From NCBI GenBank assembly GCA_965235115.1, contig OZ249450.1, positions 16,740,001 to 16,804,000 on the forward strand: a stretch of DNA of 64,000 nucleotides, in the 5' to 3' direction. A program made the translations under genes and the position numbers. The notes below the pieces were generated by a model, which was given only the letters and a program-made list of their open reading frames with translations, was not told the DNA's origin and did not search any database. This document shows, piece after piece, positions 13,854-36,705 of this stretch. The stretch is from Laetmonice hystrix. Taxonomy: Eukaryota. Numbering within the stretch: position 1 is the stretch's first letter; the number at the start of each line of letters is the position of its first letter.

Positions 13854-14384
13854 CTACACAAAGCTCTGTAGCTCTAGTTGTGACACGAGGTTCATGTTTG
13901 GGTACACTTCGTTTGGAATCGTTATGTAATCCGGCTTCTGGAACATATCGGTGTCACGTAGTGCTTTACAGAACCGTTCAATCCTTGCATAGATTCGCTT
14001 CTGTTCAGCGGAAGTTTGCGCCGCTGCGCACTCGGTGAGGAGTAGCACCGTTTCGTAGATGACGGCCTTGTGCTGGTCCTCCTTAATGAAGTCGATCTCT
14101 GAGCTGAGGCGTTTCTCCAGCACCGCAGATACCACCGTGATGACGATGATACAGAAGTTGTTGCTCAGGATGGTCCAATCAAGATGCGTGAGGAAGAAAA
14201 ACAGCAGGAACGCCGTGACGTCAGCGGCGAGAACGAGGCAGCCGAAGGTTGCGAAGACGATGAGGACGTAGCGGAGTTTGGGAGCGCTGATGTCGGTACC
14301 AGAGCCAATGTACTCGACGGCCAGGTGCTCGGCTTTCAGAGCTCGGTATGTTATCCAGCCCTGAACTACGCGTGTCGCAATAAT
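13854..14384 (-). CDS. Four-TM membrane protein paralog A, last exon
   Basis: Acceptor cctgttctcag|ATT, phase 0. Encodes IIATRVVQGW...WTILSNNFCII...DQHKAVIYETV...RDTDMFQKPDYITIP...QSFV*. Strongly similar to 34198-34725. Confidence 0.85.
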   Translation of the reverse strand: MIATRVVQGWITYRALKAEHLAVEYIGSGTDISAPKLRYVLIVFATFGCLVLAADVTAFLLFFFLTHLDWTILSNNFCIIVITVVSAVLEKRLSSEIDFIKEDQHKAVIYETVLLLTECAAAQTSAEQKRIYARIERFCKALRDTDMFQKPDYITIPNEVYPNMNLVSQLELQSFV

Positions 14385-14850
14385 CTGAGAACAGGTAAAC
14401 ACAGCGGAACTTGGAGATAACGAATTCTGAGCCGGGATGGACGGGGCAAGGACGGATCTAGGATATCAGTTGGAGAAAACATTTTAAAACCTTTAATTGG
14501 TTCCCCTTCCCCCCGGATTACACGGGCCAGTGTTACGGCGAGGCAGGGCCCGATCCAGGATTTTTTTCAAGGGGGGGGGGCTCCAGTCGTCTAGTCCGAT
14601 ATTATTATTATTTTATGAAATATATAGGCTACTACCCGTTTTAGATTCCAGATTCACACTGTAGTTTCTTGTCTTTCTTTTTTTTTTCTTTTTTAGGGGG
14701 AGGGGGGGGGGTTCTAAGGGGGGTTACAACCCCCCCCCCATCCGTCCCTGCATAGAAGCTACTCTCAATGTAAGAGTTGCCATTATAATATGATGAGTTC
14801 CCTATTACGATATTCTCTTTGAGAGACCTGAATGAGAGACGGATGCTCAC

Positions 14851-15009
14851 CAAGCAGGCGACCGTCGTCTCGACGGTGGAGGCGGCCAGGTGGAGGTCAG
14901 CGTCCACCGTCCGGAGGCTGAGACCAGCCTTCACACCGCCTAACGTTATGGCCGCCAGGTGGAGCGTCAATAGCAGCGCCTCGCTCGAAATGAGCGCCCA
15001 TAGGAAACT
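14851..15009 (-). CDS. Four-TM membrane protein paralog A, middle exon
   Basis: ctatttcag|SFLWALISSEALLLTLHL...LHLAASTVETTVACL|GTGAGC. 159 bp, phase 0-0, same length as the paralog B exon. Confidence 0.85.
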
Positions 15010-15078
15010 CTGAAATAGGGACAAGTAATAGGTTAACACTGAGGAGATTTAAATAATCAAGTCTCGTGACGTTAAAGG

Positions 15079-15109
<31 letters not shown>

Positions 15110-15564
15110 GCAGAGCGCAGAGAGAAAGACAAAGACAGAGACGTTCCAGTCGTTATCAGCTTATAGGGCCGAACCATCGTCAGATTGTTTCCATGGCAAC
15201 GTATTGAATTGTTGGCATCATCAGACCAAATAATTTATTGACTATTGTCTCAATCAGATCACATTCGTTAATTTTTTAGTGATAATCACAAAATATAGCG
15301 CCAAATTATTGAGACGTAGGGGAGAGCACGAGAATTAGGGCAGCCATTCAGCGACTTGTGGAACTAATTCTGTAGAAAGAGAACTCGGCTCAAGCCAGGG
15401 AATGGCCATGACGTCACGCGTAAGGAAATATATACATTATCGCTCGGGTGTGATCAGGTCCAGTCTTTCGCGTTATGAAAGGGAAGTACCTACGCCCGGA
15501 CTAATTGGCCACAGGCTGACTTGTGCCGAGAAATCCAGCCACTAACGTTAGGCGTAACGATCGT

Positions 15565-15654
15565 CAATCGGAACGACCGAGCCATTTCCGGTTTACTTTC
15601 CTTTCGGGAACAAGAAAGAAAAGTAAACCGGAAATGGCTCGGTCGTTCCGATTG
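15565..15654. repeat. Perfect 35-bp inverted repeat (hairpin) in an intron of paralog A
   Basis: CAATCGGAACGACCGAGCCATTTCCGGTTTACTTT (15565-15599) and its exact reverse complement (15620-15654), with a 20-nt loop. Confidence 0.9.
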
Positions 15655-15767
15655 AATGATCGTGTGTAATATCTATACAATGGGAGTGCGCCCTCTGCAT
15701 GTTCAGGCCTACGTTCTGTGGTAGGATTTTAACGTTGTGGTCCAAAAGGGGGCGCCACTTATCTCAC

Positions 15768-15950
15768 CTTTGCTGATCTCCGATTGGCTGCCGAGAAGCA
15801 GCTGCAGCAGGTCTGCTGTAGTATGTTGTGTACCCGCTGGGAGCGCTGCTGACTGTGGTCTATACGGAACCTGGTAACGTACTTGTTACCCCGGTCGGCA
15901 TCCTGTCCGAGCACGATACAACCTTCAGCCGACTCGGACACGGTCGTCGC
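15768..15950 (-). CDS. Four-TM membrane protein paralog A, N-terminal-region exon (start exon not identified)
   Basis: gtcgcag|ATTVSESAEGCIVLGQDADRGNKYVTRFRID...CCSC...AK|GTGAGA. 183 bp, phase 0-0. An in-frame stop just upstream implies an earlier exon. Confidence 0.8.
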
Positions 15951-16190
15951 CTGCGACAGCTAACAAACATAGTACAGAGCGCATGGATACCGGACTTCTT
16001 TTTTTGGGGGGGGGGGGCATATTCAAATTTTCTCATTCAGATCGCATTCTTTGTTTGTGTATAGGCTAAAGCTTCTTTGAGCAACTGTTAACATAGGCCG
16101 ATTAACCAAAGCTCTTCATCTCATGACTGGGCCTATCTTTCAGGGCATGATCAGCCAAATCGGATCCAAAATCCTGCGGAAATGGCTAAA

Positions 16191-16307
16191 CAGGGTGTCC
16201 CATAAAATGTGTATACAGTAGTGCGCAAATAGCGACTTCTTTAGGATATATCTGCGTCGCGTTTTGAAAATCATGCACTTTTTTTCTGCATGTATAGGAA
16301 CACCCTG
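16191..16307. mobile_element. Short Tc1/mariner-like MITE
   Basis: Ends CAGGGTGTCC / GGAACACCCTG resemble mariner-type TIRs. The TA target duplication is degenerate. Confidence 0.4.
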
Positions 16308-18668
16308 TGTTCTCTTCGTGGGCCGGGTGTCTGGCCGCACTAGATTCAAATGTTGATTTTTTTCTTTTCATTGGGCCTCCATGGTTCTCTATAGGCAGGG
16401 CCTTCAAAAATCATGTTCTGTTAAAAAGTGCTCGAAATGAAATGTTTCTGAGGCCTACATAACATTAAAATGGCGATGCTGCAAAATTTACCAATCAGTT
16501 TCAGTGTTCCAATACTTACACCACTCTGACTTTTTCTGAGGCCGAAGAGCTGACTACCGAAGTCCGGCGTTCCTCTGTCTGTGACGTCAGAGTCGGATCC
16601 TGTGGGCGCCTTGTACGCGTCTCCCATGATGCTCTGGGGTCCCGGAGTTCATCAGTGAGAAACCTAGAGTAAAATTTCACGGTACCTCACGAGTAGGGTA
16701 ACGCTCCAGATGAAAGGATCTAGCATTCAGGGAGGTTGGAGGTTGGATTCAAACAGGTGAAACTGACAACCACAATTAATGAAGGCGAATTCTGATTGCC
16801 TTTTCAAGTTGGTACCTCTCCCTCTTGATTTCAGATCCCGACAATCTTGGGAACGCAAAACGAACGTGAGAAGGTTAAATATGAATCGAATACTCCACAG
16901 CACACCAAGAGGTCTGTGACTGATGGTGTGCTAGCTGGAGGGCTACCTCTGTGACGTAATTATGTGCTGATAATTACAAAACGAACGTACCAGTCAGGTC
17001 CTTAACGATCGCCGACCATAGAGCGGTCAGAACCGGTCCCAGACACCTGAGTATTTGATATGAATGCGTGCTTTCCTCACGTTCTCCGTACGTCAACACG
17101 GCTGACTGTGCCATTGATGCCGGTTTAGCTGTTCCACATAACTCGACGGTCAACAAATAAACGGGACCAGTCGGCGGCCTGCAGTTTCAGCCTAGATGTG
17201 GGCCACTCTGTAGCTGAGGACCAGCCACAAAGGCCTGACTGAAGCATCTGGTCAGTATTGGCAGAGACTTCATTAAAAATGTATTCCTCTCCAACCTGGC
17301 ACCACACGAACAATCTCATGAGAAAACATTGGGGGGGGGGGAAGTTTCGATTTTTGTCTTTGTTCCCCGATCGAGGAGCTATCTTTCCCTGGGTTGAATA
17401 ACCAGGATTTATCGTCATTGTCATTTCATGAGAACAATCTTCGGTTTGGGACAGGTACTCTTGTGATCAGTATTGTGATTTTAATATTGATGTCCATCAC
17501 CTGTGCCAACTGGGCGTGACGTGACATTGTAAATAAACTTTTTTATTATGTTATAAAGCAATAGCGACAGAATTAAGTTTTACGTGCACACGTGGGAATT
17601 TTTAAATGAGTAGAACTCGTTAAGTGAATTGGCCTATATAAACGCCTTAAATGATTTTTTTTCATGAACCAGTCCAACAGAATCTAGGAAAAGATCGAAA
17701 TTGCAGCCTTCATGACATGTGGCATGAAACGCGTTGTTTTACACATCCGGCTCCCGTTGTAAGTGCAGCTGGAGCACATCTTTTTACATGCCACCTGAGT
17801 TCGTCGACTGCAACATTCCGTAAACCCTCTGACCCAAATACAACAAAGATGACACTCGGGAGCTATCCCAGGAGGGGGTGGAGGGGGGGGGGGTATCCTG
17901 ACAAGCGAGTCACCTGGGGTATTTACCATTGTCGTTTGTCTACATCGGCCTACATACAATATCCAACATGTCACTCAGTATGGGAAAGTCTTTGGCATTA
18001 TCCGAAAACCTTCCTCTTCTATATTTTTAGATTCCATTTAGCACACTGTTAATTCGGAACAACGTCACAAGATTTGATCGCTTACAGTGCATTACGCTTT
18101 AATAATGTAACCTTTATCAGGGATAGTGTAACTTGTAGCAGCGTGTGCTAAAGTTTATTAAGGCGGGATGGGGAACCAGCAAACAACTTGAGATATTCTT
18201 GCTGTCGATCAGACGCCAATGGTGATGTATCCCCGCTTCAGAAATTTCTCGGCTCTAATAAAAAAAAAACAGTTCTGTTCCCTACATGAGACAGGTATAC
18301 ACAAATATTTAAAGCTGGTCTTTCTTTTAATGATAATGATGATGCCCCCCAAATTTTATGATTATCATCTCAAATCTTTATTTTTTTTCTTGTTTGTTAT
18401 TCTTATGCGGATCGAGCTTAATTATAGTGGATCTTCATCCGCAGTTTCTTCTGATCAAAATTAATACATAATAAATAAAAATGTTTGAAAATTTCTCGAT
18501 AATCATGGTAGTGTGGCACTAAGTTGCCTAATATCATTCCATGTAAGTGGCGACACCTGTAGTATGAATGTAGAATTACATCCACAACGCCGACCCAACT
18601 ATGAGACTCTGAATCAATTAGCCATGTGGCGATCAGCATAACTCGGGAACTTAAAGATCACCATGCCG

Positions 18669-19745
18669 TTATATCAATGACTGCGGTCCACTCATTCTGT
18701 AGAAATGTTTGTAGACAAGAAATCGTTGTTTCTCGCGCGACCAGATGAAAACCATGTCAAACTGTGACACCTTGTGAATAGTGTACCATTGTTCCGCTGG
18801 GTGCCGCTGTAGTCTGGTATATTGTACATTGAAGCCGTTCACGTGTAACGTGGAAGCGTTCATTTGGTCAAGAACCAATCCGAAGTATACGTCTTCCAGC
18901 TTGAAGTACGGTACATTTTTAGATTTGTCCACCAGTCTTCTGGCCAGGTCTAACTTCATCAAAAAGGTGGTGCCGATACAATACGGTGGGTAGAAAGTAT
19001 GAGGGTATGTTTCATACGAGATATACCATCTGTGTCCCATCCGTCTTAGCGGCAGAGTCCGGCCCAGGCAGTGCCCAAACATCTTGTCTGTGAACATATC
19101 GTCATGTTCCTCGACTAAGTGCACAACGCCAGGAACATTGACGTACGTATCGTCTGCCGCTCTCATGACGTATTTGGCGGTGGGGCAGTTGTCAAGGACC
19201 CATCGTAGGCCGGTGAGGACTTTCACTGTGAGATGTTCATACGTGTCGGAATAATCTTCTTGTAGAATGTCTCCGTGTTCTTCGCTCTCCTTCCCGATCT
19301 GTCTCTGCTCCTCGCCCACAGCCAGGCCCACCAGGAACACATATCTGACACGTCCCGTATTATTCTTGGCGAATTTCGCCCAGGAGTTCCGGATAGATTC
19401 TCTTGCCGCCGCGTTCTTGGTTGCTGTGGTAATCACAATTACCATGATGATGGGTCTACCTGAGCCTCCCGAACAGACTCGCTTGGGATCTATCTCTTTC
19501 TTATAGTTCAACCGGAAGCATCCGTTACAGGACGATTTAACTGACGTGACGTTATACGTCACGTCACGTCGTGTCACGACGGTGACGTTACGTCGTGTCG
19601 GTATTGTAACGTAAACATCCTCTTTCCCGCTAAGTTGGGTCCCAGTGTAGACGCAGAGAGCGGAGAGGGCGGCGAACGCCATGACGAGGGCGGGAACCTG
19701 GCGCTGACGGTCTTTAACTCCCGTGTCGTGAGGGCGACACTCCAT
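18669..19745 (-). CDS. Beta-1,3-galactosyltransferase-like (GT31 / galactosyl_T), intronless, 358 aa
   Basis: Type II TM segment near the N-terminus, then R--IR-SW, VFLVG, E---HGDIL--D--DTY-HLT-K, YVMRAADDTYVN, YP-YPPYC-G, EDVYFG motifs. Confidence 0.93.
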   Translation of the reverse strand: MECRPHDTGVKDRQRQVPALVMAFAALSALCVYTGTQLSGKEDVYVTIPTRRNVTVVTRRDVTYNVTSVKSSCNGCFRLNYKKEIDPKRVCSGGSGRPIIMVIVITTATKNAAARESIRNSWAKFAKNNTGRVRYVFLVGLAVGEEQRQIGKESEEHGDILQEDYSDTYEHLTVKVLTGLRWVLDNCPTAKYVMRAADDTYVNVPGVVHLVEEHDDMFTDKMFGHCLGRTLPLRRMGHRWYISYETYPHTFYPPYCIGTTFLMKLDLARRLVDKSKNVPYFKLEDVYFGLVLDQMNASTLHVNGFNVQYTRLQRHPAEQWYTIHKVSQFDMVFIWSREKQRFLVYKHFYRMSGPQSLI

Positions 19746-20033
19746 GGTGCTGCCCTCTATTGACGATGTAGATTAGGTGCAACGTAATCCCATGCACTAA
19801 AGTCTCAGGGGGAGCATGCCGAACGATTACGGCAAGGAGCATCCTCGCATTCTGCTGATCTCATGTGATGCTGCAATGAGTATAAAACAATGATTTTCAA
19901 TCATTAAACATGCAAGTGTAATGAGCTGAACACTCTCATTCAGCCAAAGTGACTTCACCCCCAGGTACTTTCCAATTTCTAAGTCGTATAGCCATAAACT
20001 TTCACCCCTTATAAGTTTCCTTTCTTAGAAAAA

Positions 20034-20184
20034 GACCGTGAACGCTGACTCTCAGTGTAGATGTTCACATGTGACTGGACACATAGTAACGTGTCTCGGA
20101 CCCTTTGACAGGTCGACCGTGAACGCTGACTCTCAGTGTAGACGTTTACATGTGACTGGACACATAGTAACGTGTCTCGGACCC
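20034..20184. repeat. 81-bp direct duplication (x2)
   Basis: GACCGTGAACGCTGACTCTCAGTGTAG...GTGTCTCGGACCC at 20034 and 20115. Confidence 0.9.
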
Positions 20185-23020
20185 CATGAGAGGTCGTCCG
20201 GTCAGGCAGTGAATGTACTTGATGTGGGGTTGACTTGGTTCACCTACACCACATGAAGTTAGTAGGCAGGGTGAATCGGGGTGGGGGAAGGCGGGTGGGG
20301 TGGTGATCAGATAGCCAGGTAATGTTGAACGTAGCTGTTGCACTAAGGCCCCCAAAAGTATTTCGTTTCTTGTCACATAACATCCCCCCACTCCCAGGTA
20401 AAAAAAAAAGTTTGTTGTTTGCTTGGGTTTTTTTCTGAAAAAAAAACATCATATTAATTTTGTGGTGAGCAGTATAGCACTCTAGCATGCCATTGCAACG
20501 GTGTTTAGAAGTATTTAGCTGCGATGTTTCCCATGTGCACTTATAACATATAAATCGGCCATTGTTTGCCTGGAGCGGTGGGGTTCGCGTTCTACCTTTC
20601 CGTACATGAGTGATCTTAGCTGAGTGTGGTTTTATCCCCGTCACGGGTCAGTGGACCTTCAATAACTGCGCACCTATACCGACTGATAGGATCACCATAA
20701 CGGAAGGCCCGCCTAGCACTAACTTTATAACAACCTATCTTTCCATCTGATGTGTTGGTATATGGAAAGAGGAAAAAAGAAGAAATTCTGTATAGAGCGA
20801 GGCAACGTCACATCTTCCTTCTTGCCATTTACTTCTTGAAAAATGATGGAATTTCTGGTGACTCACGTTTCACCTTTGTTTTTATTTATTTCCCCCTCCC
20901 CCATCGACTTCTACTGACTTACCCAGAAAAACAAGTGGTTTGGCGAGTTCCTTGAGTTGATGTTAAAAAGATAACTTGTATTGAACCGCAGAAGCCGTGG
21001 CTGTATGTGGCTATGGGTTAGAGCCAAACGCCGCAGTGACAACCAGACAGCAGGACTAACACATTTTTGTGAAAAGGATAGGCCTAGGCCCTGTCCTGAA
21101 TTCGGGACATCCCAGTTGGCGCGGCCAAATACTTCCGAATCTAGGTGTTTTAGATTACCCAGCGTAGTTCTATATAATTACTTTGTCAACTCTGCCAAAG
21201 AGTCCGTGATTTTTTTGGCGCTGATATCTTTCTCAAATATGGGAGGATCCATGCAGAACGTAATGGCCTCATCCTCAGCAAAGTTTCTTCTTTTATCATA
21301 TAATTTCCGAATTAGTCCATTTCTGACCCATAGTACGTCTAATCTAGAAGGAAAACACTGAATTACATACCTGGAATAAACTGCTGTATGTCGTGAAAAA
21401 GGTGCAACAGGTCCAAAAATTGCTGGTAACTTTTGTTGGAGACCTACACTGAACTCGACAAGACAATGTGTGGCATGGGTTCCCGTCCTTCTCCGCATGT
21501 CAGCGACAGTTGTGAAGTCGAGCGTGGTGGACAGTCACCGTCAGTTCAAGGTGTCGGTATACTGCGTCTATATCATTTGGAAGCTTCACATGATCAACTT
21601 GAATCGGTTCTTTATTTGCATTTTTTATACTTAAATGAAAGAAATTAGTATATTATGAATATCCTGGGAGGTAAGGCGGTAAAATGGGTCACGTGACGTA
21701 ATGCATCAATAATCCTGCAGAGGTCGCTGTGTTCACTCAACTGTGTCACTGAGACCTGGTTTCACCTGAGGTCGCTAGGGGGCAGGTGTAAGTCGGTCAA
21801 ACAGAACGCGAGGGGATTGCTGCTCGATAAGCTAAATTTCAGGTCGTCAAGGTCATTTCATAGAGGTCGTAAATCGCCTGACTCTCAACGAGACCTGAAA
21901 CTGAGTAAAGGAGGACATTACAACATGCTATCCTAAGGTGCCCCCCCCCCAAAAAAAAAAACAAATAAATAATTAAATAATTAAATAATTATATAAATGG
22001 AATGAATGAATGTGTGGAGCTCTTCATATAGGCCTAAATATGTTGTCGTTACAGACTTTGTAAACATGTCACAGGTGAAAAAAAGGTTTCACGCGATCAT
22101 GGTCTATAACCCGTCACACTGAAGCACCGTTTTGTTAATTGCTTACAGTCATCTAATGACTGAATGAGGTCATGACATAAACTGATCATCATACGAAGTT
22201 TATAATATACAGGAATGAACGCGTTTGATATATTTGAGGGCAAAGCCCTGGGAAACAATATATGAAAGATAATGACATGTATGCGGGCATTGGGTGATAT
22301 ATCGGGAGAACAGCAATAATAAATATATCAGAGTATATGGAGGAAGTTACATATTTGAGCGGCATAAATCTGATATTGCTTTCTAGGAAAACACAGACAC
22401 AGGAAGGAAAACACTTACTTCCGTATAAGACTCCTAGTTCTGTCAGCAGGAGGCTTGCATTAATTAGAATAGTAGTATGTCATGTTCTGTTACACTCTTT
22501 AGTTTGTTGTATAAATATATCTGGACACCATGTCTCGGTGAGGGGGATGGTAACGTGTTGTTCAGACAGGTGTTTAATTGAGGGAGTGAAGAGCAAATGG
22601 AGAATTGATGCCGAGTGGCCGTTTATTTTGTGAGTCTTTATCACACCATCCAATCTAACACTAGTGTGACTCCGTTTGCCGATTTAGGAGAAGTCATCTG
22701 TATCAATTTACAACTAATAAAACTTCAACATTGCGTTAAGATTAAGATTATAATTATTCAATACGAGGGGCAGGGGGACTTCCCTGCTTCCATGTCTGTT
22801 TGATTTGACCTGTCTTGACCTTGAGAGAAGCCATGTTAAGGAGAGAGTTGGGACGCTGGCGATGTCTGGGACTGGTCTACGTCCGCCCCCCTCCCACAGT
22901 TATACGACCAGGTTATACCATTAAATCAACCTTGGTCAGCGACTGCCGACACATAATTAACGGCGTCCGCACAAATTAGGTTATGAGGTATGATTCTGGG
23001 GACGGCTAGAGGCGTCAGAT

Positions 23021-23040
23021 CACGTGGTCACTATATAAAG
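23021..23040 (+). promoter_or_regulatory. Core promoter of the His-rich gene: E-box and TATA box
   Basis: CACGTG (23021) and TATATAAAG (23032-23040), about 60 bp upstream of the signal-peptide ATG at 23095. Confidence 0.6.
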
Positions 23041-23094
23041 TGCGAGTATCCGGTGGAGGAGGAGGGAGTCGGACCACACACTACATGGGATAAC

Positions 23095-25386
23095 ATGGAC
23101 TGGCTTGTCATTGTTACCGCTTGGTTGACAGCAATCTCAGTCGGAATCCATGCACTTCACAAAGATACCGGACAAAGTGGCACCGGACAAATTAGTACCG
23201 GACAAAGTAGCGCCGGGGAGATTGGTAAGCGTCAGCCGTATACTGATGGAGCTGACGCTTTAAGCTCCAGGCTTAGGAAGGACGAGTTCCTGGGTGATAC
23301 GGAGGATGAGGTTGAGCCGGCCGAGCAAGACGGTCTGGGAGCTCCTGTCAGTTATATTGACCTGGGGATACGTCACGGTCAACCAAAGTATGGAGTCGAA
23401 AGTCACCAGGAGGACATAGGACACGGGACATGGGACATGGGGCATGGAGAGAAAGGTCAAGGTCAGCGGGACATGGGACATGGAGATAAAGGTCAAGGTC
23501 AGCGAGGATATAATCCCCGACACGGACAACAAGGTCACGGCCAAGGGGGACATAGCCACACGCAAAAGGGACGCAGTCACGTGCACAGTGACGTGCATAA
23601 GGGGCACAGTGACGTACATTCGTTCAAACATATCGGACATGACGTTGACGTTGACGCACCCAATGGTGACGGAGTGTTACGTCACGGTGGTCACGGGAAG
23701 ACGAACTCCTGGGAGTACGGATACGGAGAACTGGAGCATGAACTGGCGCGCAGTCAGGCTGGAGACCGCTATGACGGTCATGACAAGCAGGGTCACGACG
23801 GTCATGACGGGAGTAGTCATGACGGGCAGGGATACGTCTACGGCCACTTGGTGGAAGACAATGAATTTTGGGACCAGGATCGAGGTCACGGAGACGCGGA
23901 CAGTGGACCTGCGCAGGACGGTCCGGATCTCAGAGATGGGGAGCTGGTGGCTAGTCACGTGATGTACCCAAACCGAGGTCAATCAGGAGAGGTCACCGGA
24001 AGCACTGGGCGTCATTACAAGGGGAATTCCCCTGGTGGTGGCCGGGGGAATCACAATCAGGACGTGCATGGCCGGAAATGGGAGAGCCGAGGAAAATACA
24101 AGGGGCAAAGAGAGGAAACGGAAGAGGAGGAAGCGAACGAAACGGAAGAAGGGGAGTTTACTGAGGACTTTATGGAGCTCAGTGAAGAACACCACAGACT
24201 CTGGGAGACATTACGTCAGAAGCATGCGAAGGCGATGCAAGAAAGACTCAGTAAAAATGAGATGAAACTAAAGACCCAAGCACTCCAAGGGATGAATTAC
24301 AGCGACCAGTATTCTGAAAGATCACGTCCGAGGCAGGATACGCGTGGAGGGCAAAGGCGGGTAGGACCTCCGCCCGAGGCAAAGAAATACATGCCCAGAG
24401 AACGAAGTCATGGCCGCCGTGGTTACCTTGGTGACGTGCCGCGTCGACCTCTGGGAAGAACTGCTCGAAAAGACAACCATGACAGGTTTGACCGGACCGA
24501 CTCAAAACACAACCATCACAGCACGAGGAGGCACAGTCACGGTAGGCATCGGCAAGCCGACAGACAGATCTACGATAAACATATCCGCCGAGGTCATGGC
24601 CGCCCTGCGCAGGCGCACACTCGTGGGAGGAAATATATTAAACAAGGTGAAAAAAGGAGAAATCGTGGCCCCATGGAACCCCGGCACGTCAGGGAGGATA
24701 GAGAACTGATAGAGTCTGATAGAGAACAACGGTATCACGACAGAACCCATCAGAAGAATGTCAGACATGTCAAGAACAGACACGTTGGGCGCCATCCTAA
24801 ACGGAAGCATTTTTACAGGGAAAATGGCCACCGGAACCATCGACTTGAAGGGACGCCTGCGCATTCACCCGACCATGACCGGAGTTATACGAACCATAGG
24901 CAGGGCGGCAAGACCGTTGAGTCACGTGACCGGCGGCGGAAGGCTGAGCATATCCCGGAAGGAAGGAAATACGAGAACAAAGGATTCTGGGAAGACGAGC
25001 GGGTGAATGTTATAGGTCCTGCAGATGACGAAGCTTGGAACAAAAATAGCCAGGTGGAGAGAAAGAGTTACACGGACATAGCAATCGAGGACAGTGACGG
25101 CCACAGTCACGGCCGTGACGGTCACGTGTCTGCTAAGAGCACCTTTGGTGACGGAGGCTACGGTCACGGAACCAACAGTTACGGTATGCGCAACTTCGCC
25201 AAATCTGTCTACGGAAAGGGCAATTCTGGGAAGTCCCTTGGCGGCCACTATATCATGGGGAACTCGGCGTTCCAGAAGGCGCTGCGTACGGGGTTCTCCG
25301 TGCCCGTGCACGAGTACGACGAGAACAAGGACGGGGTGCCGGACGCCCTCGACATGAACCGTGACGGCAAACTGGACGACCTCTGA
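23095..25386 (+). CDS. Secreted His/Gly/Asp- and Arg/His-rich low-complexity protein, intronless, 763 aa
   Basis: Uninterrupted 2.3-kb ORF. Signal peptide MDWLVIVTAWLTAISVGIHA, GHG/GHD-rich acidic part, poly-Glu block, Arg/His-rich part, and C-terminal DENKDG..DMNRDG motifs. ATG 23095 is preferred over 22990 because the TATA box lies between them. Confidence 0.85.
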   Translation: MDWLVIVTAWLTAISVGIHALHKDTGQSGTGQISTGQSSAGEIGKRQPYTDGADALSSRLRKDEFLGDTEDEVEPAEQDGLGAPVSYIDLGIRHGQPKYGVESHQEDIGHGTWDMGHGEKGQGQRDMGHGDKGQGQRGYNPRHGQQGHGQGGHSHTQKGRSHVHSDVHKGHSDVHSFKHIGHDVDVDAPNGDGVLRHGGHGKTNSWEYGYGELEHELARSQAGDRYDGHDKQGHDGHDGSSHDGQGYVYGHLVEDNEFWDQDRGHGDADSGPAQDGPDLRDGELVASHVMYPNRGQSGEVTGSTGRHYKGNSPGGGRGNHNQDVHGRKWESRGKYKGQREETEEEEANETEEGEFTEDFMELSEEHHRLWETLRQKHAKAMQERLSKNEMKLKTQALQGMNYSDQYSERSRPRQDTRGGQRRVGPPPEAKKYMPRERSHGRRGYLGDVPRRPLGRTARKDNHDRFDRTDSKHNHHSTRRHSHGRHRQADRQIYDKHIRRGHGRPAQAHTRGRKYIKQGEKRRNRGPMEPRHVREDRELIESDREQRYHDRTHQKNVRHVKNRHVGRHPKRKHFYRENGHRNHRLEGTPAHSPDHDRSYTNHRQGGKTVESRDRRRKAEHIPEGRKYENKGFWEDERVNVIGPADDEAWNKNSQVERKSYTDIAIEDSDGHSHGRDGHVSAKSTFGDGGYGHGTNSYGMRNFAKSVYGKGNSGKSLGGHYIMGNSAFQKALRTGFSVPVHEYDENKDGVPDALDMNRDGKLDDL

Positions 25387-27929: not shown

Positions 27930-28028
27930 TACGTGATAGGCGTGGCCCACGTGATAGTTCCGATCACGTGATAGCCGCTGATGACATGATAGAGGATGAC
28001 CACGTGATGGTCGTTGAGCACGTGATAG
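27930..28028. promoter_or_regulatory. Periodic CACGTGATAG (E-box/GATA-like) cluster
   Basis: Motif or variant at 27930, 27948, 27965, 27984, 28001 and 28019, spaced 17-19 bp apart. Confidence 0.4.
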
Positions 28029-28315
28029 CCGCTGAGGCGCGATATCCTTCATTCCGAGAGCATGTATTCGGACAGAACAGGACTATGTACAAGGAACCCT
28101 TCAAGCACGGAAACCCGTCCTGGGAGGAAACTGGGGAAACTGGACACTTGTATGGCTATCTTGGGAGACTAGATGCAGCTTTTTTCTTATTTGTGAAACA
28201 GATTTGATAAATCCCTAACTGTAGTAGCGTTTTGTTGATGCAATACTTTATGAAAACTGAACGCCAATGACCAGCATACTTCAACATGGAAACCGGAAGT
28301 GGTTTATAACGGTGA

Positions 28316-28517
28316 GTCTGTCCCTCCCTGACAGACTCTGCCGTGGTGCGGGATACCCAACCAATCCCACATCACGGCACCTGCTGAATCATGACAGGTC
28401 TGTCGCTCCCTGACAAGTCTGTCCCTCCCTGACAGATCTGTCCCTTCCTGACAGACTCTGCCGTGGTGCGAGATGCCCAACCAATCCCACATCACGGCAC
28501 CTGCTGAATCATGACAG
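28316..28517. repeat. 120-bp-period duplication with about 20-bp sub-repeats
   Basis: ACAGACTCTGCCGTGGTGCG...CTGCTGAATCATGACAG at 28331 and 28451. Confidence 0.85.
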
Positions 28518-29548
28518 TCAAATCAGTATTTGATGATTGTTTAGAAATTAATTTACAATACTCATTGCTTTCTTATTGGCGTTATCTGCTAGCTTTTACC
28601 GGGGATATAAAACAAATACATGAATCGTGAATGACTTCAGGTCTTTATGGCAGTTTGATGTTTCAGTGATACTATAACTCATGAACTAATAACGTGACGT
28701 TAAGTAGCTAGCAGGGTCTGGAAATCTTTAATATATCAACAACTAATGACGGTAAGCGAGACGCAAGGGTTCCGACCGTCAAACGTTACGTCAGACGCTT
28801 ACGTCTAAAAAGGTGTTGACTAATAAAAAATTAAGTATGAAAAATAACGTATGGATTGATGCAAAGAATTGAAAAGCTCACCTATCCGCGTTCCTGTGGA
28901 AACTATAAACGGAAATTCCTCCTTCGGTATGAATATTCGAAGGAAAATACCACAAATATAGAAACTGATGCCTACGATACAACATATGCGTGAACCCAGG
29001 TGAAAGCAAATATGCGGATGCACCTGGGGGTCTGGTTTTTTTCTTATTCATTTAGGGGCGGACGAGTTTATACCGGGGGGGGCTATGTTTTTTTTTCTTC
29101 CTGAGCAAACGTTTTCTTCGCCCCCAGGTCGAAGCTATCTATTTTTTCCGCTACGACCATTAATCTAAGTATTTTTCCCATTTATATGGAACTATTTTTT
29201 TTTATGTAGTTTGATGAACAAACTATTTTTTCCTGTATTTGCATGGTGAACAGATTTTTTTTAAACAAACCATATCCCCCCACCCCCACGTATCAAATGG
29301 TCCGCCCCTTAAATACCTATGAATAGGCCTAACATTTAAGACGTCGGGTGTTCACCTTGCCACATGAATGAGTAGGCGGTACGGATCAATGACGGAAACA
29401 GCCGAGAAGTCCCGAACAATAATCGAGACCGGTAAGCCTGTATCAGCTGACGTCACTGCGGCAGGTCTGGGCAGGTCAGGGCAGTACACGGCTCGTGTCT
29501 GGCACCGGCCCAGCGAGGCGGCCATGGCGGCGGGGAGACCGGAGTTGG

Positions 29549-29668
29549 TATATAAAGGCCTGGGTCCCGGCGACCGGTTTCAATTGATCAGCGGATCTCA
29601 GACGGAGGCGATCGAGCCGAGCACACACTGACTGACTGAGCAAGCACAGAATTATCGGGGCTCTGTCT
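29549..29668 (+). promoter_or_regulatory. TATA box and non-coding first exon of the RNF216-like gene
   Basis: TATATAAAGG at 29549, Inr-like TCAATT at about 29580, donor CT|GTAAGT after 29668, and acceptor tttctag| at 30470 just upstream of ATG 30491. Confidence 0.55.
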
Positions 29669-30490
29669 GTAAGTATGGTCTGTGTATACCACGTGCTCAC
29701 CATAAAATTGCACCCGATGTAGGCCTAATAAAAAATGAAGTCCAACCAAGAATAGGAGAAAATCAATGTCACACTGGGTAGTTCCACATCAATGTTACAC
29801 TGGGTATTTCCACTGCGCCACGGGACATCTGTGACAAGGCGTTCACAATGGCAGATCATAGATCTAGGTATGGTGTCCTGCGACCATATGAGGCTGTAAA
29901 TTATTAGTATTTCAATTTATTTTTTTTCCACATTTTATTTTTTGCCGTGGGTAGAAAAGGGCCGAAATCAATAGGCCTGTACGTGTTCCTGTGGCAGGAG
30001 GTGCTTCCTCTATATAAAATGATTACTGTCAGTCCTATAAACAGAATAACAATCTATCTAGCATTCACCCAATCTTCTGGTAGGCCTATTGTGCAATGAT
30101 TTAAACACAAGCTGAGACAAGTGCTGCGTTAGGCCTATTATAGATATAAACGTCGGTCGCCCCTGCATAGTCGGATCAAAGATCCTTATCTGTGCCAATG
30201 ATTTTAACAAACATGCACAATGTAAGAGCCTCTTCCTCAGGTATATTATGACAGTGGTTCGACCAGTTCTGTCTATATGAGTCATACGTATTCCTGTCTG
30301 ATATTGCACAACATGCTGAAATGAACGGTGACGTCAGATGCCGCTAGGTGGAGGTGCAATCGCAACTTGTGTTTTGAGTGAGTCGGTCCCTGTGAATGAT
30401 CTGGGTTAGACCTGGAGCCACTTATAATTTGTATAAGTGTGTCTGACATGTCTGAACTAATCATTTCTAGCACGGCAAGAATTATACACC

Positions 30491-31538
30491 ATGGAACTCC
30501 AGCGGAATCTGAGAAAAAGGCCATCATACACTCCACCTAGTGGTGGTTGTCCAAACAAGCGGGCCAGAATGAGCGTCTGTGAAGACGGGGCATCCTCCTC
30601 AAAGGGCGGCGACCCCGACGGCGTCCAAACTCTCCACAGACCGCGTCGCCATAGCAACAGACGGACGCCGCCGACTCGCGCGCCGTCTGTGGGAATCGGC
30701 TACTGGTCCCTGCGCAGTTACGGGACACCAGGGGTCGCGCCAGTCGTCCGCTCACTCAGCGCAGAGAGCGATGAGTGCGCAGAGAGAGATGAGTGCTCAG
30801 AGAGAGATGAGTGCGGGTCGAAGCTAGCGACTGGGGATCCGAAAACACGGACTGTAAAACGAATCTCGAGCACTAACATCATCGACGTGACAGTTTCTAA
30901 ACGAGTTCCTCTCTCCAGAGACTCTCAACTTCAGTTAGACCTGCCTCGACCGACACAAACAATCTGTGAGGGTGATGACGTCGCGCAGAATCCAGCGGAA
31001 CCAATGGACACTGAGGCTACTCCTTGCCTCTCCCAACCGCTAGGTGGCGGGCCGATGGACACTGAGACACTGCCCAGTGGCCAGACATGCCCTGGAGGAC
31101 CAACCCTGGAGGAGGAGATTGAACGGGTCGCCGAGGTTCACCCTGAATGTGACCCCGATTACATCCGGAAACTACTGCTCCGTCATGACGAGACTGACCG
31201 AGTGTCGACCGTGACGTTTGACCTGTTTGACACCGAGGACTTCCCGACTAGAGCCGAACGCGAGCTCCGGCAGCAGAGGGACGCTGAGCGTCTGACGTTG
31301 GCCAACCTGTCCTGTCCGGTAGGAGAGTTTCTACAGAAGTACCCCGACCCCAAGGTTACATTTTATGACCAAACCGTTGAGGTAGACGAACTCTACGTGG
31401 AGCACGTGGTCACTGCACTCCGAAATGAATTCCGTATGATACCAGTCACTTACATCCGGGAATGTGTGCGTCGTCATGGTTACCGACTTGCACCAACTTA
31501 TCAGGAATTAAAAGGCAACGCAAAAACCTACACTGGCA
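30491..31538 (+). CDS. RNF216/TRIAD3-like RBR E3 ubiquitin ligase, coding exon 1 (low-complexity N-terminus plus CUE-like helical region)
   Basis: ATG in accATGG. Contains LRNEFRMIPVTYIR...LAPTYQEL. Phase-1 donor A|GTAAGT. Confidence 0.85.
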
Positions 31539-31708
31539 GTAAGTAATGTAATTTATGTTGCCTATAAAGAAATAGTATCTCTAATTGTCAAATATAGGAC
31601 AATATAACTTTAATCAAAATATAAGGAAACACTTACACACACACCATTTATCTAACCAAATAGAAATCTGTACTTTATTTCCACTGAAGATCCTTTTGTT
31701 TTTTCTAG

Positions 31709-31840
31709 AACCTCCCTGTTTGAGAAGGAGCCGGAAGTACATGCGAACACCCCGTCAGTACGCGAAGGAGATGCCCGAGGAGCCTGATCGTGACTTCTAC
31801 TGGGAACTTCTCTACGTGAAACACGAGCAAGACATTCTAG
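31709..31840 (+). CDS. RNF216-like E3 ligase, coding exon 2
   Basis: tttttctag|..PPCLRRSRK...DFYWELLYVKHEQDIL G|GTAAAC, phase 1-1. Confidence 0.85.
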
Positions 31841-32058
31841 GTAAACCATCTATCTGTCTGATTACATACACAATGAACACATGAGATATAACTGTATACC
31901 TCGGATTACCAACGGTCAACAGTACACTAGGGGTAAATACGTTTAATGGCAATCTACTGGAAAAGGAAAAGTATAGAAGAGGGAAAAGATTGAATAATGA
32001 CTGTAAAACCACCGCTCCGCTGCCCCATTTTTGTAGCTGGGTTTCTCTTTACCTACAG

Positions 32059-32494
32059 ACCTGGTGGAAGCAGAACGCCTGGAGAAACAGGTGAGGTACG
32101 AAGCCGCCCGGGAGGCCGGGACGCTGCACACGTGCGCCATCTGTCTACAGGAGGAGGTACTAGAGGACGACATGGTCGCCTGCTCTGCGAACCACCTCTT
32201 CTGTAACACATGCGTGCGCAACTTCGTCACGGAATTACTGGGTCAATGTAGAGGGCGCTTCCCCTGCCTGGATGGAGAGTGCCAAGAGGCGTTTCCTCTG
32301 GCCCGCTTGCAGAGGGTCCTGTCGGAGGAGACCTACAGGATGGTCGTCAGACGGGCTCAGATGGAGGAGGTCCTGCTGGCTAACATTCCAGACATTGTCA
32401 CCTGTCCATTCTGTCCTTATGCCGTCGTCATACCGGACGAGAGTTCGCGTGTGTTCCACTGTGAGAACCCGGACTGCCTCAAGGATTCTTGCAG
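32059..32494 (+). CDS. RNF216-like E3 ligase, coding exon 3 (RING1 and start of IBR)
   Basis: CAIC...CSANHLFCNTC...CLDGEC (RING1) and CPFC...CENPDC...SC (IBR). Phase 1-2. Confidence 0.92.
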
Positions 32495-32637
32495 GTAGGA
32501 ACCAACAATTACAACACCGTATTCTCCTTCCTTGGAGGCCTAAAAAGTAGGCCTCATAGGTTACCGAGAAACTCTGGCATTAGGACCCAGTTCCGCCCTC
32601 TCAATATGAATCTGACCGGGTGTTTCAATATCGCCAG

Positions 32638-32883
32638 GTCATGTAAAAGCCAGAGCCACCTCCCGTTGACTTGCCAAGAGTTTCGCGATAAGCGTGACGT
32701 CACAATGCGTAACTACATCGAGGCTCGTATGGCGGAAGCGATGATCCGGGTGTGTAAGTGTGGCCTGCGGTTTGTGAAGGAGATGGGTTGTAATTACATG
32801 ACGTGTACAACCTGCCAGGCCCACATGTGTTACGTCTGCAGACAGTTCATAGACGGCTACCAACACTTCCGCAAAAACAAAAG
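32638..32883 (+). CDS. RNF216-like E3 ligase, coding exon 4 (end of IBR and RING2)
   Basis: SCKSQSHLPLTC...IEARMAEAMIRVCKC...KEMGCNYMTCTTCQAHMCYVCRQ...GYQHF. The catalytic Cys is in GCNYMTC. Phase 2-2. Confidence 0.92.
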
Positions 32884-33101
32884 GTACGTCGTCAGTCAGT
32901 TTCGGCTAGAAAATGGTGCTAGGTCTAATTTCAAAGTACTTTAAGAGCAAAAGGTTAATTTTTGTGTGTAGGGAGAATCTCTCCTTTGGACCACGTCTAA
33001 GCATAAGGTCTTTATTTCTCCGGAGTACAGGTTTCTTTGTTTTTTATTCAAATCTTCGCATGATTTATGACCGTTAAATGCCCTCTCTCCCCGTCCTGCA
33101 G

Positions 33102-33255
33102 ATGTCAAGGTATGTCCGACATGAGAATGCTTCACGAAGGAGAGATCAAGACAGCCGCTGAGGAGGCGGACCGTGATTTCCGTGAAGAGCACCCAGAACT
33201 GGCCGACGTTGATCGACTTGAACTGTTTGGGTTGTTTCCATCTACCTCAACCTAA
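33102..33255 (+). CDS. RNF216-like E3 ligase, last exon
   Basis: cgtcctgcag|A CQGMSD...HEGEIKTAAEEA...*. The five exons sum to 2016 nt = 671 aa plus stop. Confidence 0.8.
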
Positions 33256-33689
33256 TACAACTGTCTCTCACAGAAAACATCGAAATAACTTGTAAATAAT
33301 GTTACATTAGTGTCCCTGTTGACATGTAGTACATGTCTCATTGTCAGGTGTGTTTGAGGGGTCATTAATCACCCTGGAAAAAAGATCTGTTACTGACGAT
33401 TACTCTTCATTGGTATGAATAATTTATTCCAGACTTTAACGGATTGTGTTACTGGATATAGAGAATAAAATTAATATTCCAGAACTTTAGTCTCTTGTTG
33501 TTCACCAATATTTTGATCAGGGGTTGTTCGAATGTTTGCGCCTAGTGGGGACTGAACTTGACATCTATTGCAACGATGGGTCGAAACTGATTCACAAACA
33601 TCACCATTTCCAAGCCCAGCATGAACGCTAAATGTCGCTTTATTATTCACACAAAACATAACATGTCCTTGACAAAAGAAAATAACTGG

Positions 33690-33773
33690 CAGAGCCTGCA
33701 AGGCTGCCTTCCGGACATTGACCTGTTCACCCGAAACACGACGGCGCAATGTCGAAACCAGCCCCTTACCATC
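33690..33773 (-). pseudogene. Isolated fragment resembling condensin-II subunit D3 (NCAPD3) HEAT repeat
   Basis: DGKGLVSTLRRRVSGEQVNVRKAALQAL recalls LRRR--DEKxNVRK-ALQ-L. No intact splice sites and no flanking exons. Confidence 0.4.
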
Positions 33774-34059
33774 AACCAGGAAGGCCAATAATCGTAATAC
33801 AAAAAGAGGTTATAAAAAATGTCACTAATTTAAAGGCCGACTTTGAGATCGGTCGAGTTTACCTTGGCAAGATGTGGCCATGGCTCGGCCTGGTAGCACC
33901 AGGAAATGCTTTAAACAGTCTCATAGATAGCTATAAATATCAATGGGATATATTATGTCCAATGATCTGCGGGTCTCTCTATAAATCTTTATAAACCTCG
34001 CAGCAAGAGTTGGAGCCTATAATCTAGAACGTTACGCTACCACGCTACCAGGGTTAGGC

Positions 34060-34201
34060 TAATACGAATTAGACGTCCGAACGCCTAGTACAATTAACCC
34101 ACCCAAAGGGTTAATACGAATTGGACGTCCGGACGCCTAGTACAATTAACCCACCCAAAGGGTTAATACGAATTGGACGTCCGAACGCCTAGTACAATTA
34201 A
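34060..34201. repeat. 52-bp tandem repeat x about 2.7, abutting the stop codon of paralog B
   Basis: TAATACGAATTGGACGTCCGAACGCCTAGTACAATTAACCCACCCAAAGGGT at 34060, 34112 and 34164. Confidence 0.9.
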
Positions 34202-34725
34202 ACCAGACTCTGAAATTGGAGTTGTGCTATCGTGTTCATGTGACGTTGAGGAAGGGTGATGTAGTCGGGCCGCTGGAACATGTCTGTGTCTCTGAGCGCC
34301 TTACAGAAATGTTCCACCTTGTCGTGGAAGTGCTGTTCGCTGTCGGTCTCTGTGTGAGAGTGACTCAGACTCTCAGTGAGAAGGGTGACCGTCTCGTAAA
34401 TCACCGCTTTGTGTTGGTCCGACCTGATTCCCTCTAACTCCAGATCAATCCGCGCCGATAGCACACCAGATGTCGCTGTGATCATTATGATACAAAAATT
34501 GTTACTGAGGATTGTCCAGCCAAGATGGGCGAAATAGAAAAACAATATGAAGGCCGCCAGAGCTCCTCCTATCAAAAAACCGCCAAATACGGTAACCATG
34601 ACAACGACTTGACGTAGTCTGGGCGTGCGCAGTCCGACCCCTTCCTGCACGAACTCAATGCGCGTGCGCTCTCGTCGGAGAGCTTTGAAGCCTTGCCAGG
34701 CCGCAGCTATCCGTGTCACTATTAA
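34198..34725 (-). CDS. Four-TM membrane protein paralog B, last exon
   Basis: ttctcttccag|LIVTRIAAAW...WTILSNNFCII...DQHKAVIYETV...RDTDMFQRPDYITLP...QSLV*. Acceptor at the same residue as in paralog A. Confidence 0.85.
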   Translation of the reverse strand, partial: LIVTRIAAAWQGFKALRRERTRIEFVQEGVGLRTPRLRQVVVMVTVFGGFLIGGALAAFILFFYFAHLGWTILSNNFCIIMITATSGVLSARIDLELEGIRSDQHKAVIYETVTLLTESLSHSHTETDSEQHFHDKVEHFCKALRDTDMFQRPDYITLPQRHMNTIAQLQFQSLV

Positions 34726-34983
34726 CTGGAAGAGAACCGATTCTTTAGGACAGTGTACGTGTCGCACGTCGGGTTTGGATAAACCGTAAACAAGGTCTGT
34801 GGACAGAGAGAGGGAGGGACGGACAGACAGACAGACAGACAGAGTCAGAGAGAGTTACAGCGTTTCCATTATGATAGAGACGGACTTTTGTGTCCCAAGA
34901 AGTTGTAACTTTTACAAGGACACTTAGGACCTACAGATGACCTATACCTACGTGACCTATACCTACAGATGACCTATACCTAC

Positions 34984-35142
34984 GTGCACGGCGACGTATG
35001 TTTCTATAATAGATGCGGTAAGGTGGAGGTCTTCATCAACACGGCGCAGATCGAGACTCTCCTTGACTGTCATTACAATCACTGCCGATAGGTGGAGTGT
35101 CAGCATGAGAGGTTCACTCGTCAACACGGCCGGAATGAAGCG
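34984..35142 (-). CDS. Four-TM membrane protein paralog B, middle exon
   Basis: atttgcag|RFIPAVLTSEPLMLTLHL...LHLTASIIETYVAVH|GTAGGT. 159 bp, phase 0-0. Confidence 0.85.
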
Positions 35143-35427
35143 CTGCAAATATACACAACGCATTCTGGTATTTTTTTTTGGGGGGGGGGGGGCGGCTTAA
35201 CCGGCTTGAGCGCCCCCCCCCCCCCCCCAAGCAAGATTTGCTGGATACGTCCCTGACTCTATAGTGAAGAGTTTGTTTTTCAAAGTCCAGACGCACAATT
35301 CGGTAGAGATAAATTTGAATAATGAAAGATTAAATTATACATTTCCCTCCAGAAACAACAGAATGAACATCTTTTGAGCATTGATGACGTCACAACCATT
35401 TGGTGACGTAAGCCGTGCCGCACGCAC

Positions 35428-35610
35428 CTTGAGTGACTCGCGGTTTTCGGGTAGCTTGCAGGGACAGCATTCTTCTTCAAGGACGTGACCTGCCAAATGG
35501 TGGCGCTGCTTGGTACGATCTATGCGACACCTTGTGACGTATTTGTTTCCTCGACCAGCGTCTTGGCCGAGAACAATACAGCCGTCCTCTGGGTTTAACA
35601 TAGACGAGCT
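35428..35610 (-). CDS. Four-TM membrane protein paralog B, N-terminal-region exon
   Basis: ttgtttgcag|SSSMLNPEDGCIVLGQDAGRGNKYVTRCRID...CCPC...LK|GTGCGT. 183 bp, phase 0-0. The true start could instead be ATG 35667. Confidence 0.8.
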
Positions 35611-36552: not shown

Positions 36553-36705
36553 NNNNNNNNNNNNNNNNNNNNNNNNNNNNNNNNNNNNNNNNNNNNNNNN
36601 NNNNNNNNNNNNNNNNNNNNNNNNNNNNNNNNNNNNNNNNNNNNNNNNNNNNNNNNNNNNNNNNNNNNNNNNNNNNNNNNNNNNNNNNNNNNNNNNNNNN
36701 NNNNN
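36553..36705. other. Assembly gap (153 N)
   Basis: Run of n characters. Confidence 1.

What the first reader, a model, noticed from the sequence alone, without database searches (positions are those of the whole stretch)
13854..35610. Pair of paralogous four-TM proteins of no recognised family, with polar TM residues and PDZ-type tails
Seen: two genes about 20 kb apart share exon lengths (183/159/about 530 bp) and three phase-0 splice positions. They conserve GCIVLGQDAxRGNKYVTRxRID, a CCxC cluster before TM1, Glu plus His in TM1 (SE...LHL) and TM2 (LHL..S..ET), HLxW-TILSNNFC around TM4, and a helical tail (DQHKAVIYETVxLLTE...FCKALRDTDMFQxPDYITxP). They end QSFV* and QSLV*, both class-I PDZ ligands. 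Inference: a lineage-expanded channel- or transporter-like tetraspan family, possibly palmitoylated, scaffold-anchored and tyrosine-regulated (YxxI/L). It lacks the claudin/TARP W-GLW-C-C loop and the tetraspanin CCG loop.
Basis: partly seen in the sequence, partly recalled or inferred. Interest (0 to 1): 0.72.

Follow-up and report, generated by a model that had tools for sequence, protein, structure and literature searches.

The report
Unnamed annelid four-helix membrane protein family
Two intact, related genes in this window belong to a small, unnamed family of four-pass membrane proteins, so far named only in annelid worms, that matches no known protein family or fold; what it does is unknown.

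Summary
Both minus-strand genes have 183/159/531 bp (A) and 183/159/528 bp (B) exons with AG/GT sites in phase 0. They are 49% identical over 290 residues.

I found gene A's missing start exon at 16627-16520, giving a 326-aa protein. Gene B's start is unresolved. The genome holds four copies, not two: A, B, a younger copy of A, and an old intronless copy.

The genes are under constraint. dN/dS for A against its younger copy is 0.14, and A and B each have an ortholog in another species.

An exhaustive HMMER search found 130 cluster representatives. Of the 30 clusters and 23 listed hits checked, the only named members are three hypothetical proteins from the annelids Capitella and Dimorphilus.

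No Pfam, PDB-sequence, Foldseek, VIA-align or ESM Atlas search gave a specific relative. Confident models (pLDDT 82 and 93) show a plain up-down four-helix membrane bundle with almost no outside loops. An S/T-x-hydrophobic C-terminus occurs in 41 of 56 members.

A channel or transporter role is inference only. I found no RNA data for this organism.

The parts
16520..16627 (-). Gene A coding exon 1 (ATG at 16627; 36 aa MGDAYK...KSQSG; gtaagt donor; phase 0)
   Evidence: A block of about 77% DNA identity to the region upstream of the paralog on the same chromosome. The reading frame, ATG and donor are conserved.
15768..15950 (-). Gene A exon 2 (183 bp): cytoplasmic beta-hairpin GCIVLG...YVTRFRID, a helix, and the CCSC cluster
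   Evidence: AG/GT sites and phase 0. Aligns along its full length with intronless homologs.
14851..15009 (-). Gene A exon 3 (159 bp): TM1 (conserved Glu and His), short outside loop, TM2 (His, Ser, Glu)
   Evidence: hydropathy; model.
13854..14384 (-). Gene A exon 4 (531 bp including the stop): inside loop, TM3, HLDW-TILSNN TM4, helical stalk (EDQHKAVIYE), tail ending QSFV
   Evidence: The only coding variant seen in the DNA runs (13920) is synonymous.
13711..13716 (-). Candidate polyadenylation signal AATAAA, 138 nt after gene A's stop
   Evidence: Pattern scan only. No transcript evidence.
35428..35610 (-). Gene B 183-bp exon (same intron position as gene A exon 2). In-frame ATGs at 35601 and, upstream of the acceptor, at 35667
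   Evidence: The start codon is unresolved.
34984..35142 (-). Gene B 159-bp exon: TM1, loop, TM2
34198..34725 (-). Gene B last exon (528 bp including the stop): TM3, TM4, helical stalk, tail ending QSLV

Best explanation
SHOWN. Genes A and B are intact paralogs under selective constraint. They are two of four paralogs in this genome. They belong to an unnamed family of roughly 290-360-aa membrane proteins whose only organism-named members are annelid hypothetical proteins.

The protein has these parts, in order:
- a cytoplasmic beta-hairpin plus helix;
- a cysteine cluster next to the membrane;
- a plain up-down four-helix membrane bundle with outside loops of only about 8 and 3 residues;
- cytoplasmic extensions of TM2 and TM4 that form a helical stalk;
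- a flexible tail ending in S/T-x-hydrophobic.

INFERRED (about 0.3-0.35 on its own). The conserved polar residues line one face of TM1, TM2 and TM4. In gene A full-length numbering they are:
- outer end: Asp/Glu 133-135, His137, His217, Trp220, Thr221;
- middle: His114, Ser141, Glu144, Asn225 and Asn226;
- inner end: Glu107, Arg155.

Together these would form a continuous polar track through the bundle. I therefore read the protein as a small proton- or metal-cation-conducting (or -sensing) unit. In principle it would work like Hv1 or M2, but it is unrelated to them. The C-terminal tail would hold it at PDZ scaffolds at cell contacts or synapses.
For: Gene structure and paralogy.

First exon of gene A.

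Constraint:
- dN/dS for A against its younger copy is 0.14, with dS 0.68.
- A against B has pS 0.76 and pN 0.32.
- The one coding variant seen is synonymous, against 13 other single-base differences in UTR, intron and upstream DNA.

Orthologs of A and B in another species, with 100/98 and 100/96 support. A Galactosyl_T gene neighbours the A ortholog there, as it does here.

Family size and names.

Models: full length pLDDT 82, pTM 0.77. Membrane part pLDDT 92.6, pTM 0.86.

Four hydrophobic segments. By my count, 13 Lys/Arg lie on the predicted inside against 2 outside.

Conservation out of 56 sequences: His114 48, Glu144 54, Arg155 51, Trp220 56, Thr221 51, Asn225 46, Asp253 54, Glu261 54.

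PDZ-type end in 41 of 56 members.
Against: - There is no functional, expression or localisation data.
- No RNA run exists for this organism.
- The polar track is read from helix periodicity and the models' secondary structure. I could not inspect coordinates.
- Buried His/Glu/Asn residues could equally be a structural or partner-docking network.
- The oligomer test gave no answer.
- TM4 carries no basic residues, so the bundle is not a voltage sensor.
- The restriction to annelids rests on only three named proteins.
Confidence: 0.4

Rival explanations
1. The protein does not conduct. It is an adaptor or auxiliary subunit. Its membrane polar residues dock onto a partner receptor or channel, and its C-terminal tail links that partner to PDZ scaffolds. 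This is the job TARPs, claudin-like GSG1L or cornichons do for glutamate receptors, done here by an unrelated fold.
For: The S/T-x-hydrophobic end is conserved family-wide. The outside loops are tiny, so there is no ligand-binding surface. The protein is small. A large conserved cytoplasmic stalk and N-terminal domain would suit protein-protein contacts.
Against: Conservation is strongest at mid-membrane charged residues (Glu144 in 54 of 56, His114 in 48 of 56). TM3 is poorly conserved. No partner is indicated. The neighbouring iGluR-like gene is not evidence in an animal genome.
Confidence: 0.3
2. It is a very distant or truncated member of a known family that these tools missed. One candidate is the seven-TM insect gustatory/odorant receptor superfamily. 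Another is some other four-TM family.
For: Three of 41 members give sub-threshold 7tm_7 hits. The best is 26.1 bits against a cut-off of 26.6. Gustatory and odorant receptor structures appear among the top, non-significant Foldseek rows.
Against: Only four hydrophobic segments are present. TM-scores to the receptors are about 0.2, with E above 0.1. The membrane-only model matches only generic four-helix bundles (Z at most 11.8, below the roughly 13 expected by chance for helical bundles). The family profile finds nothing in PDB sequences.
Confidence: 0.1
3. It is a metal- or haem-binding four-helix membrane protein with a redox or metal-sensing role. Under this reading nothing crosses the membrane.
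For: Conserved His residues sit at the outer ends of TM2 and TM4 and in mid-TM1. The top, non-significant AFDB row is a bacterial DUF4405 four-TM protein.
Against: There is no paired-His spacing on two helices as in b-type cytochromes. His140 is lost in both A and B. The AFDB rows have E above 0.1.
Confidence: 0.1
4. The reading frames are chance ORFs or dead pseudogenes.
For: No transcript evidence is available for this species.
Against: The frames are intact and the splice sites canonical. dN/dS is 0.14. There are cross-species orthologs and conserved synteny. The exhaustive search returned 130 family cluster representatives. Transcript-like contigs of a distant member recur with the same ends in at least four runs.
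Confidence: 0.02

Closest known systems
Capitella teleta hypothetical proteins CAPTEDRAFT_215030 and CAPTEDRAFT_196459, and Dimorphilus gyrociliatus CAD5117219.1 (all uncharacterised)
   Same: Same family. They align along their full length and share the GC..LG/Y.TR hairpin, the PCC cluster, TM1 His, TM2 Glu, HLGWT.LSNN and EDQHK..E..LLL.E. Two of the three end in S-x-V; CAPTEDRAFT_196459 ends TSC.
   Different: Roughly 25-36% identical to A and B (Capitella P0094 25-27%, Dimorphilus P0031 31-32%, the clade mate of CAPTEDRAFT_215030 36%). None has a name, a Pfam domain or a described function, so they give no functional information.
Claudin/PMP22/TARP tetraspan proteins
   Same: Four TM helices, both ends inside the cell, and a C-terminal PDZ ligand.
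   Different: No W-GLW-C-C first loop; the loop here is about 8 residues with no cysteine. No Pfam hit above threshold. The fold search places claudin-3 only at rank 44, with E 4.9 and TM about 0.15.
Hv1 voltage-gated proton channel and influenza M2 (comparison of principle only)
   Same: A conduction path could run inside a single small helical bundle lined by His and acidic residues. TM4 continues into a long cytoplasmic helix, as S4 does in Hv1.
   Different: There are no S4 arginines. There is no sequence or fold match. The H-x-x-W at the TM4 start is not the M2 H-x-x-x-W spacing. The resemblance comes from my own knowledge and was not tested.
Insect gustatory/odorant receptor superfamily (Pfam 7tm_7)
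   Same: Weak sub-threshold profile hits in 3 of 41 members. Long membrane helices extend into the cytoplasm.
   Different: Four helices rather than seven. TM-score about 0.2. Below the Pfam gathering score.

Membership tests
Unnamed annelid four-TM family (CAPTEDRAFT_215030-like) | Full-length alignment with the shared motifs (GC..LG...Y.TR hairpin, PCC, TM1 His, TM2 Glu, HLGWT.LSNN, EDQHK..E..LLL.E) | tested here: met
   A and B align end to end with 45 or more full-length members at E from 1e-101 to 1e-7.
Claudin/PMP22/TARP | Long first outside loop with W-GLW-C-C, and a Pfam PMP22_Claudin or Claudin_2 match | tested here: not met
   The loop is about 8 residues with no Cys. There are no Pfam hits. 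One of 41 members hits Claudin_3 at E 0.015, below threshold.
Tetraspanin | Large second outside loop containing CCG | tested here: not met
   The TM3-TM4 loop is about 3 residues (AHL/THL). No Pfam hit.
7TM gustatory/odorant receptor superfamily | Seven membrane helices and a Pfam 7tm_7/7tm_6 match at the gathering score | tested here: not met
   Four hydrophobic segments. Best score 26.1 against 26.6 bits, in 3 of 41 members. Foldseek TM about 0.2.
Voltage-sensor domain / Hv1 | A fourth helix with periodic Arg/Lys | tested here: not met
   TM4 (WTILSNNFCIIVITVVSAVL) has no basic residue. No Pfam or fold hit.
Orai, CALHM, MARVEL, connexin/innexin | A Pfam or structural match to the family | tested here: not met
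   None appears in the Pfam scans or in the Foldseek, VIA-align or Atlas searches.
Class I PDZ ligand | A free C-terminus of S/T-x-hydrophobic that binds a PDZ domain | tested here: inconclusive
   The motif is present in A (SFV), B (SLV) and 41 of 56 members. Binding cannot be tested with these tools.
S-palmitoylated juxtamembrane cysteine cluster | Acylated cysteines near the membrane | not testable with these tools
   The C-x-P-C-C cluster lies about 12 residues before TM1. Pro is present in 48 and Cys in 47 of 56 members. The modification itself cannot be seen.

The most novel reading that the evidence does not exclude
The family is a previously unrecognised class of small ion channel. A single four-helix bundle would conduct protons or zinc-like cations along a His-Glu-Asn track, and a PDZ ligand would cluster it at synapses or junctions. 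It may have arisen within annelids or a wider spiralian group.
Probability: 0.2. Interest if true: 0.8.

Novelty: categorically new. Interest (0 to 1): 0.5.

Why it matters
If the conserved polar track is a conduction path, this would be a new ion-channel or transporter architecture. It could be tested directly by expressing a 326-aa protein.

Even if it is only an adaptor, it is a conserved and selectively constrained membrane protein family with a PDZ anchor. Current databases leave it entirely unannotated. Naming it would improve annelid genome annotation and give single-cell atlases of Platynereis or Capitella a gene set to look at.

The caveat is that orphan membrane families restricted to one lineage are common. 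'New' here means no detectable relative. It does not mean a demonstrated new mechanism.

Tried and rejected
- RNA evidence. The look-up of sequencing runs returned only three runs of one sample, none on record as RNA and all covering introns and flanks like genomic DNA. Laying their contigs showed genomic coverage, repeats in the introns and no spliced joints. Transcription of A and B is therefore untested.
- Oligomer test. Complex prediction with four copies of residues 36-285 of P0007 returned no verdict. The tool folded without the alignment, at pLDDT 46-48. This counts neither for nor against oligomerisation.
- Gene B's first exon. Homology scans with N-termini of relatives gave only noise. 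Scans for an ATG, open frame and phase-0 donor gave one weak candidate, 36148-36077. A masked N run at 36553-36705 lies in the likely region. I left it untouched.
- ESM Atlas feature searches gave no usable hit.
- Literature searches for the Capitella identifiers, the assembly accessions and descriptive terms found nothing relevant.
- The 7tm_7 lead was rejected for the reasons given in the membership test.
- A segmental duplication of A together with its galactosyltransferase neighbour was rejected. No such gene lies near the younger copy.
- Rfam found nothing in 13000-37000.
- My last protein search, with the galactosyltransferase, was set too strictly to name the organism.
Full report
**Observation**

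On the minus strand, gene A has exons 15950-15768 (183 bp), 15009-14851 (159 bp) and 14384-13854 (531 bp including the stop). Gene B has exons 35610-35428 (183 bp), 35142-34984 (159 bp) and 34725-34198 (528 bp). Every boundary has an AG acceptor with a pyrimidine tract and a GT donor, and all introns are phase 0.

The translated last exons are 47% identical (E = 2e-64). The three-exon products are 49% identical over 290 residues.

**Completing the gene models**

I compared the DNA upstream of gene A with the DNA upstream of its closest paralog. One conserved block stood out, at window 16515-16630. It holds an ATG at 16627, a 36-codon open frame (MGDAYK...KSQSG) and a gtaagt donor in phase 0. 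The paralog conserves all of these, with a 7-residue insertion. Gene A therefore encodes 326 residues from four coding exons.

Gene B uses the same acceptor position, 9 codons before the Gly-Cys motif. I could not find an upstream exon. In-frame ATGs lie at 35601 and 35667, and a masked N run at 36553-36705 sits where an exon might be. B's start is therefore open.

**Copies in the genome**

A six-frame profile search of the whole 627-Mb assembly found four loci, all on the same 24-Mb contig:
- A and B in this window;
- a third gene 2.9 Mb away with the same 183/159/531 exon structure;
- an intronless 303-codon ORF about 15 kb from that third gene.

**Evidence that the genes are real**
- A against the third gene gives dN/dS 0.14 at dS 0.68. 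A against B is saturated at silent sites (pS 0.76), with pN 0.32.
- In a maximum-likelihood tree, B pairs with a protein from another assembly (support 100/96). A and its younger copy pair with a different protein from another assembly (100/98). The A/B duplication therefore predates that speciation.
- The contig carrying the A ortholog also carries a Galactosyl_T gene a few kb upstream in the same orientation, as this window does at 18669-19745.
- In the three DNA runs that hold this stretch, the only variant inside coding sequence (13920) is synonymous. Thirteen other single-base differences lie in UTR, intron and upstream DNA.
- No RNA run is available for this organism, so splicing of A and B is supported by conservation only.
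- Uninterrupted homologs align across the predicted exon junctions.
- A distant family member occurs on about 1.95-kb contigs with identical ends in at least four independent runs, which looks like a transcript.

**The family**

An exhaustive HMMER search of 1.84 billion cluster representatives, using the last-exon profile, found 130 proteins at E up to 1e-3 and 99 at E up to 1e-10. Full-length members are mostly 290-360 residues.

Of the 30 clusters I looked up and the 23 proteins listed with sources, only three proteins carry a name. Two are Capitella teleta hypothetical proteins and one is an unnamed Dimorphilus gyrociliatus product. All three are annelid. I did not verify that beyond this agreement.

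**Comparison with known families**

Pfam gives nothing at threshold for the exon pieces, the intronless paralog or 41 full-length members. The commonest weak hit is 7tm_7, in 3 of 41 members, with a best score of 26.1 bits against a 26.6 cut-off. Single-sequence and profile searches of all PDB chain sequences give nothing below E 0.6.

An AlphaFold2 model of the closest full-length relative has pLDDT 82 and pTM 0.77. That relative, P0007, is 48-49% identical to both A and B. A model of the membrane part alone has pLDDT 92.6 and pTM 0.86. Search results for the two models were:
- Foldseek against PDB and AFDB clusters: no match below E 0.1.
- VIA-align against 48,161 chains: only designed or generic helical bundles, with Z at most 11.8. 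The tool says about 13 is to be expected for helical bundles by chance.
- ESM Atlas shape search: only unrelated rows.

I therefore treat the family as having no detectable characterised relative. I could not run a profile-profile search against Pfam or PDB70.

**Architecture**

Four hydrophobic segments are present in both A and B. The models give, in order:
- a beta-hairpin (GC.VLG ... Y.TRFRI), a helix and the C-x-P-C-C cluster;
- TM1;
- an outside loop of about 8 residues rich in Asp and Glu;
- TM2, a 40-residue helix running on into the cytoplasm;
- an inside loop;
- TM3;
- a 3-residue outside loop;
- TM4, a 54-residue helix running on into the cytoplasm;
- one more helix and an extended tail.

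By my count on gene A, 13 Lys/Arg flank the membrane on the predicted inside against 2 outside. This fits both ends lying in the cytoplasm, where a PDZ ligand must be.

Conservation over 56 sequences, in gene A full-length numbering:

| Residue | Present in (of 56) |
|---|---|
| His114 (TM1) | 48 |
| Glu144 (TM2) | 54 |
| Arg155 | 51 |
| His217 | 41 |
| Trp220 | 56 |
| Thr221 | 51 |
| Asn225 | 46 |
| Asn226 | 43 |
| Asp253 | 54 |
| Glu261 | 54 |
| Glu268 | 48 |
| Pro301 | 50 |

TM3 is poorly conserved. Forty-one of 56 members end in S/T-x-hydrophobic. By my rough estimate, chance would give about 5%.

**Mechanism (inference)**

The conserved polar residues recur at i, i+3/4 and i+7 spacing on TM1, TM2 and TM4. 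They span from the acidic, His-rich outer mouth to Glu107 and Arg155 at the inner end. I read this as a polar track through a single bundle, and so as a small proton- or metal-cation-conducting or -sensing unit held at PDZ scaffolds. On its own I give this about one chance in three.

A non-conducting adaptor that docks a partner through the same residues is nearly as likely. I could not inspect model coordinates, and the one oligomer test returned no verdict.

**Verdict**

The channel, palmitoylation and tyrosine-regulation readings are unproven. The last is weakened because YETV sits inside a confident helix.

The family is real and unnamed, and it has no detectable relative. It is interesting mainly as a candidate new membrane-transport or scaffolding module that an ordinary expression experiment could test.

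Noticed in passing
G000 contig C20, 19625571-19626482 (L004:1105-2016, + strand): An old, divergent, intronless paralog encoding 303 aa and ending ESGV. It lies about 15 kb from the younger copy of gene A. Several homologs in other assemblies are also single-exon (L005-L009). It is unclear whether the introns were gained in the A/B lineage or whether these are retained retrogenes.
   Followed up: partly
window 14453-14686 and 15389-15739: Both introns of gene A hold very high-copy repeats, with summed contig depth in the thousands against about 50 for the flanks. The second contains an inverted repeat and looks MITE-like.
   Followed up: no
window 18669-19745 (-): An intronless beta-1,3-galactosyltransferase-like gene (Pfam Galactosyl_T, E = 1.9e-43) lies just upstream of gene A. 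The same neighbourhood is seen next to the A ortholog in another species.
   Followed up: partly
window 30491-33255 (+): A multi-exon gene with Cys-rich RING/IBR-like exons. Only a weak IBR_1 hit was found (E = 9e-4, below threshold). It is probably an RBR-type E3 ligase and lies between genes A and B.
   Followed up: no
window 14540-14760 and 35160-35260: Long G-runs abutting C-runs (poly-G/poly-C palindromes) lie in the introns of both paralogs, at different intron positions.
   Followed up: no
window 22990-25386 (+): A 798-codon His/Gly/Arg-rich open frame with no Pfam hit. The scan has already noted it separately (s1-330561).
   Followed up: no
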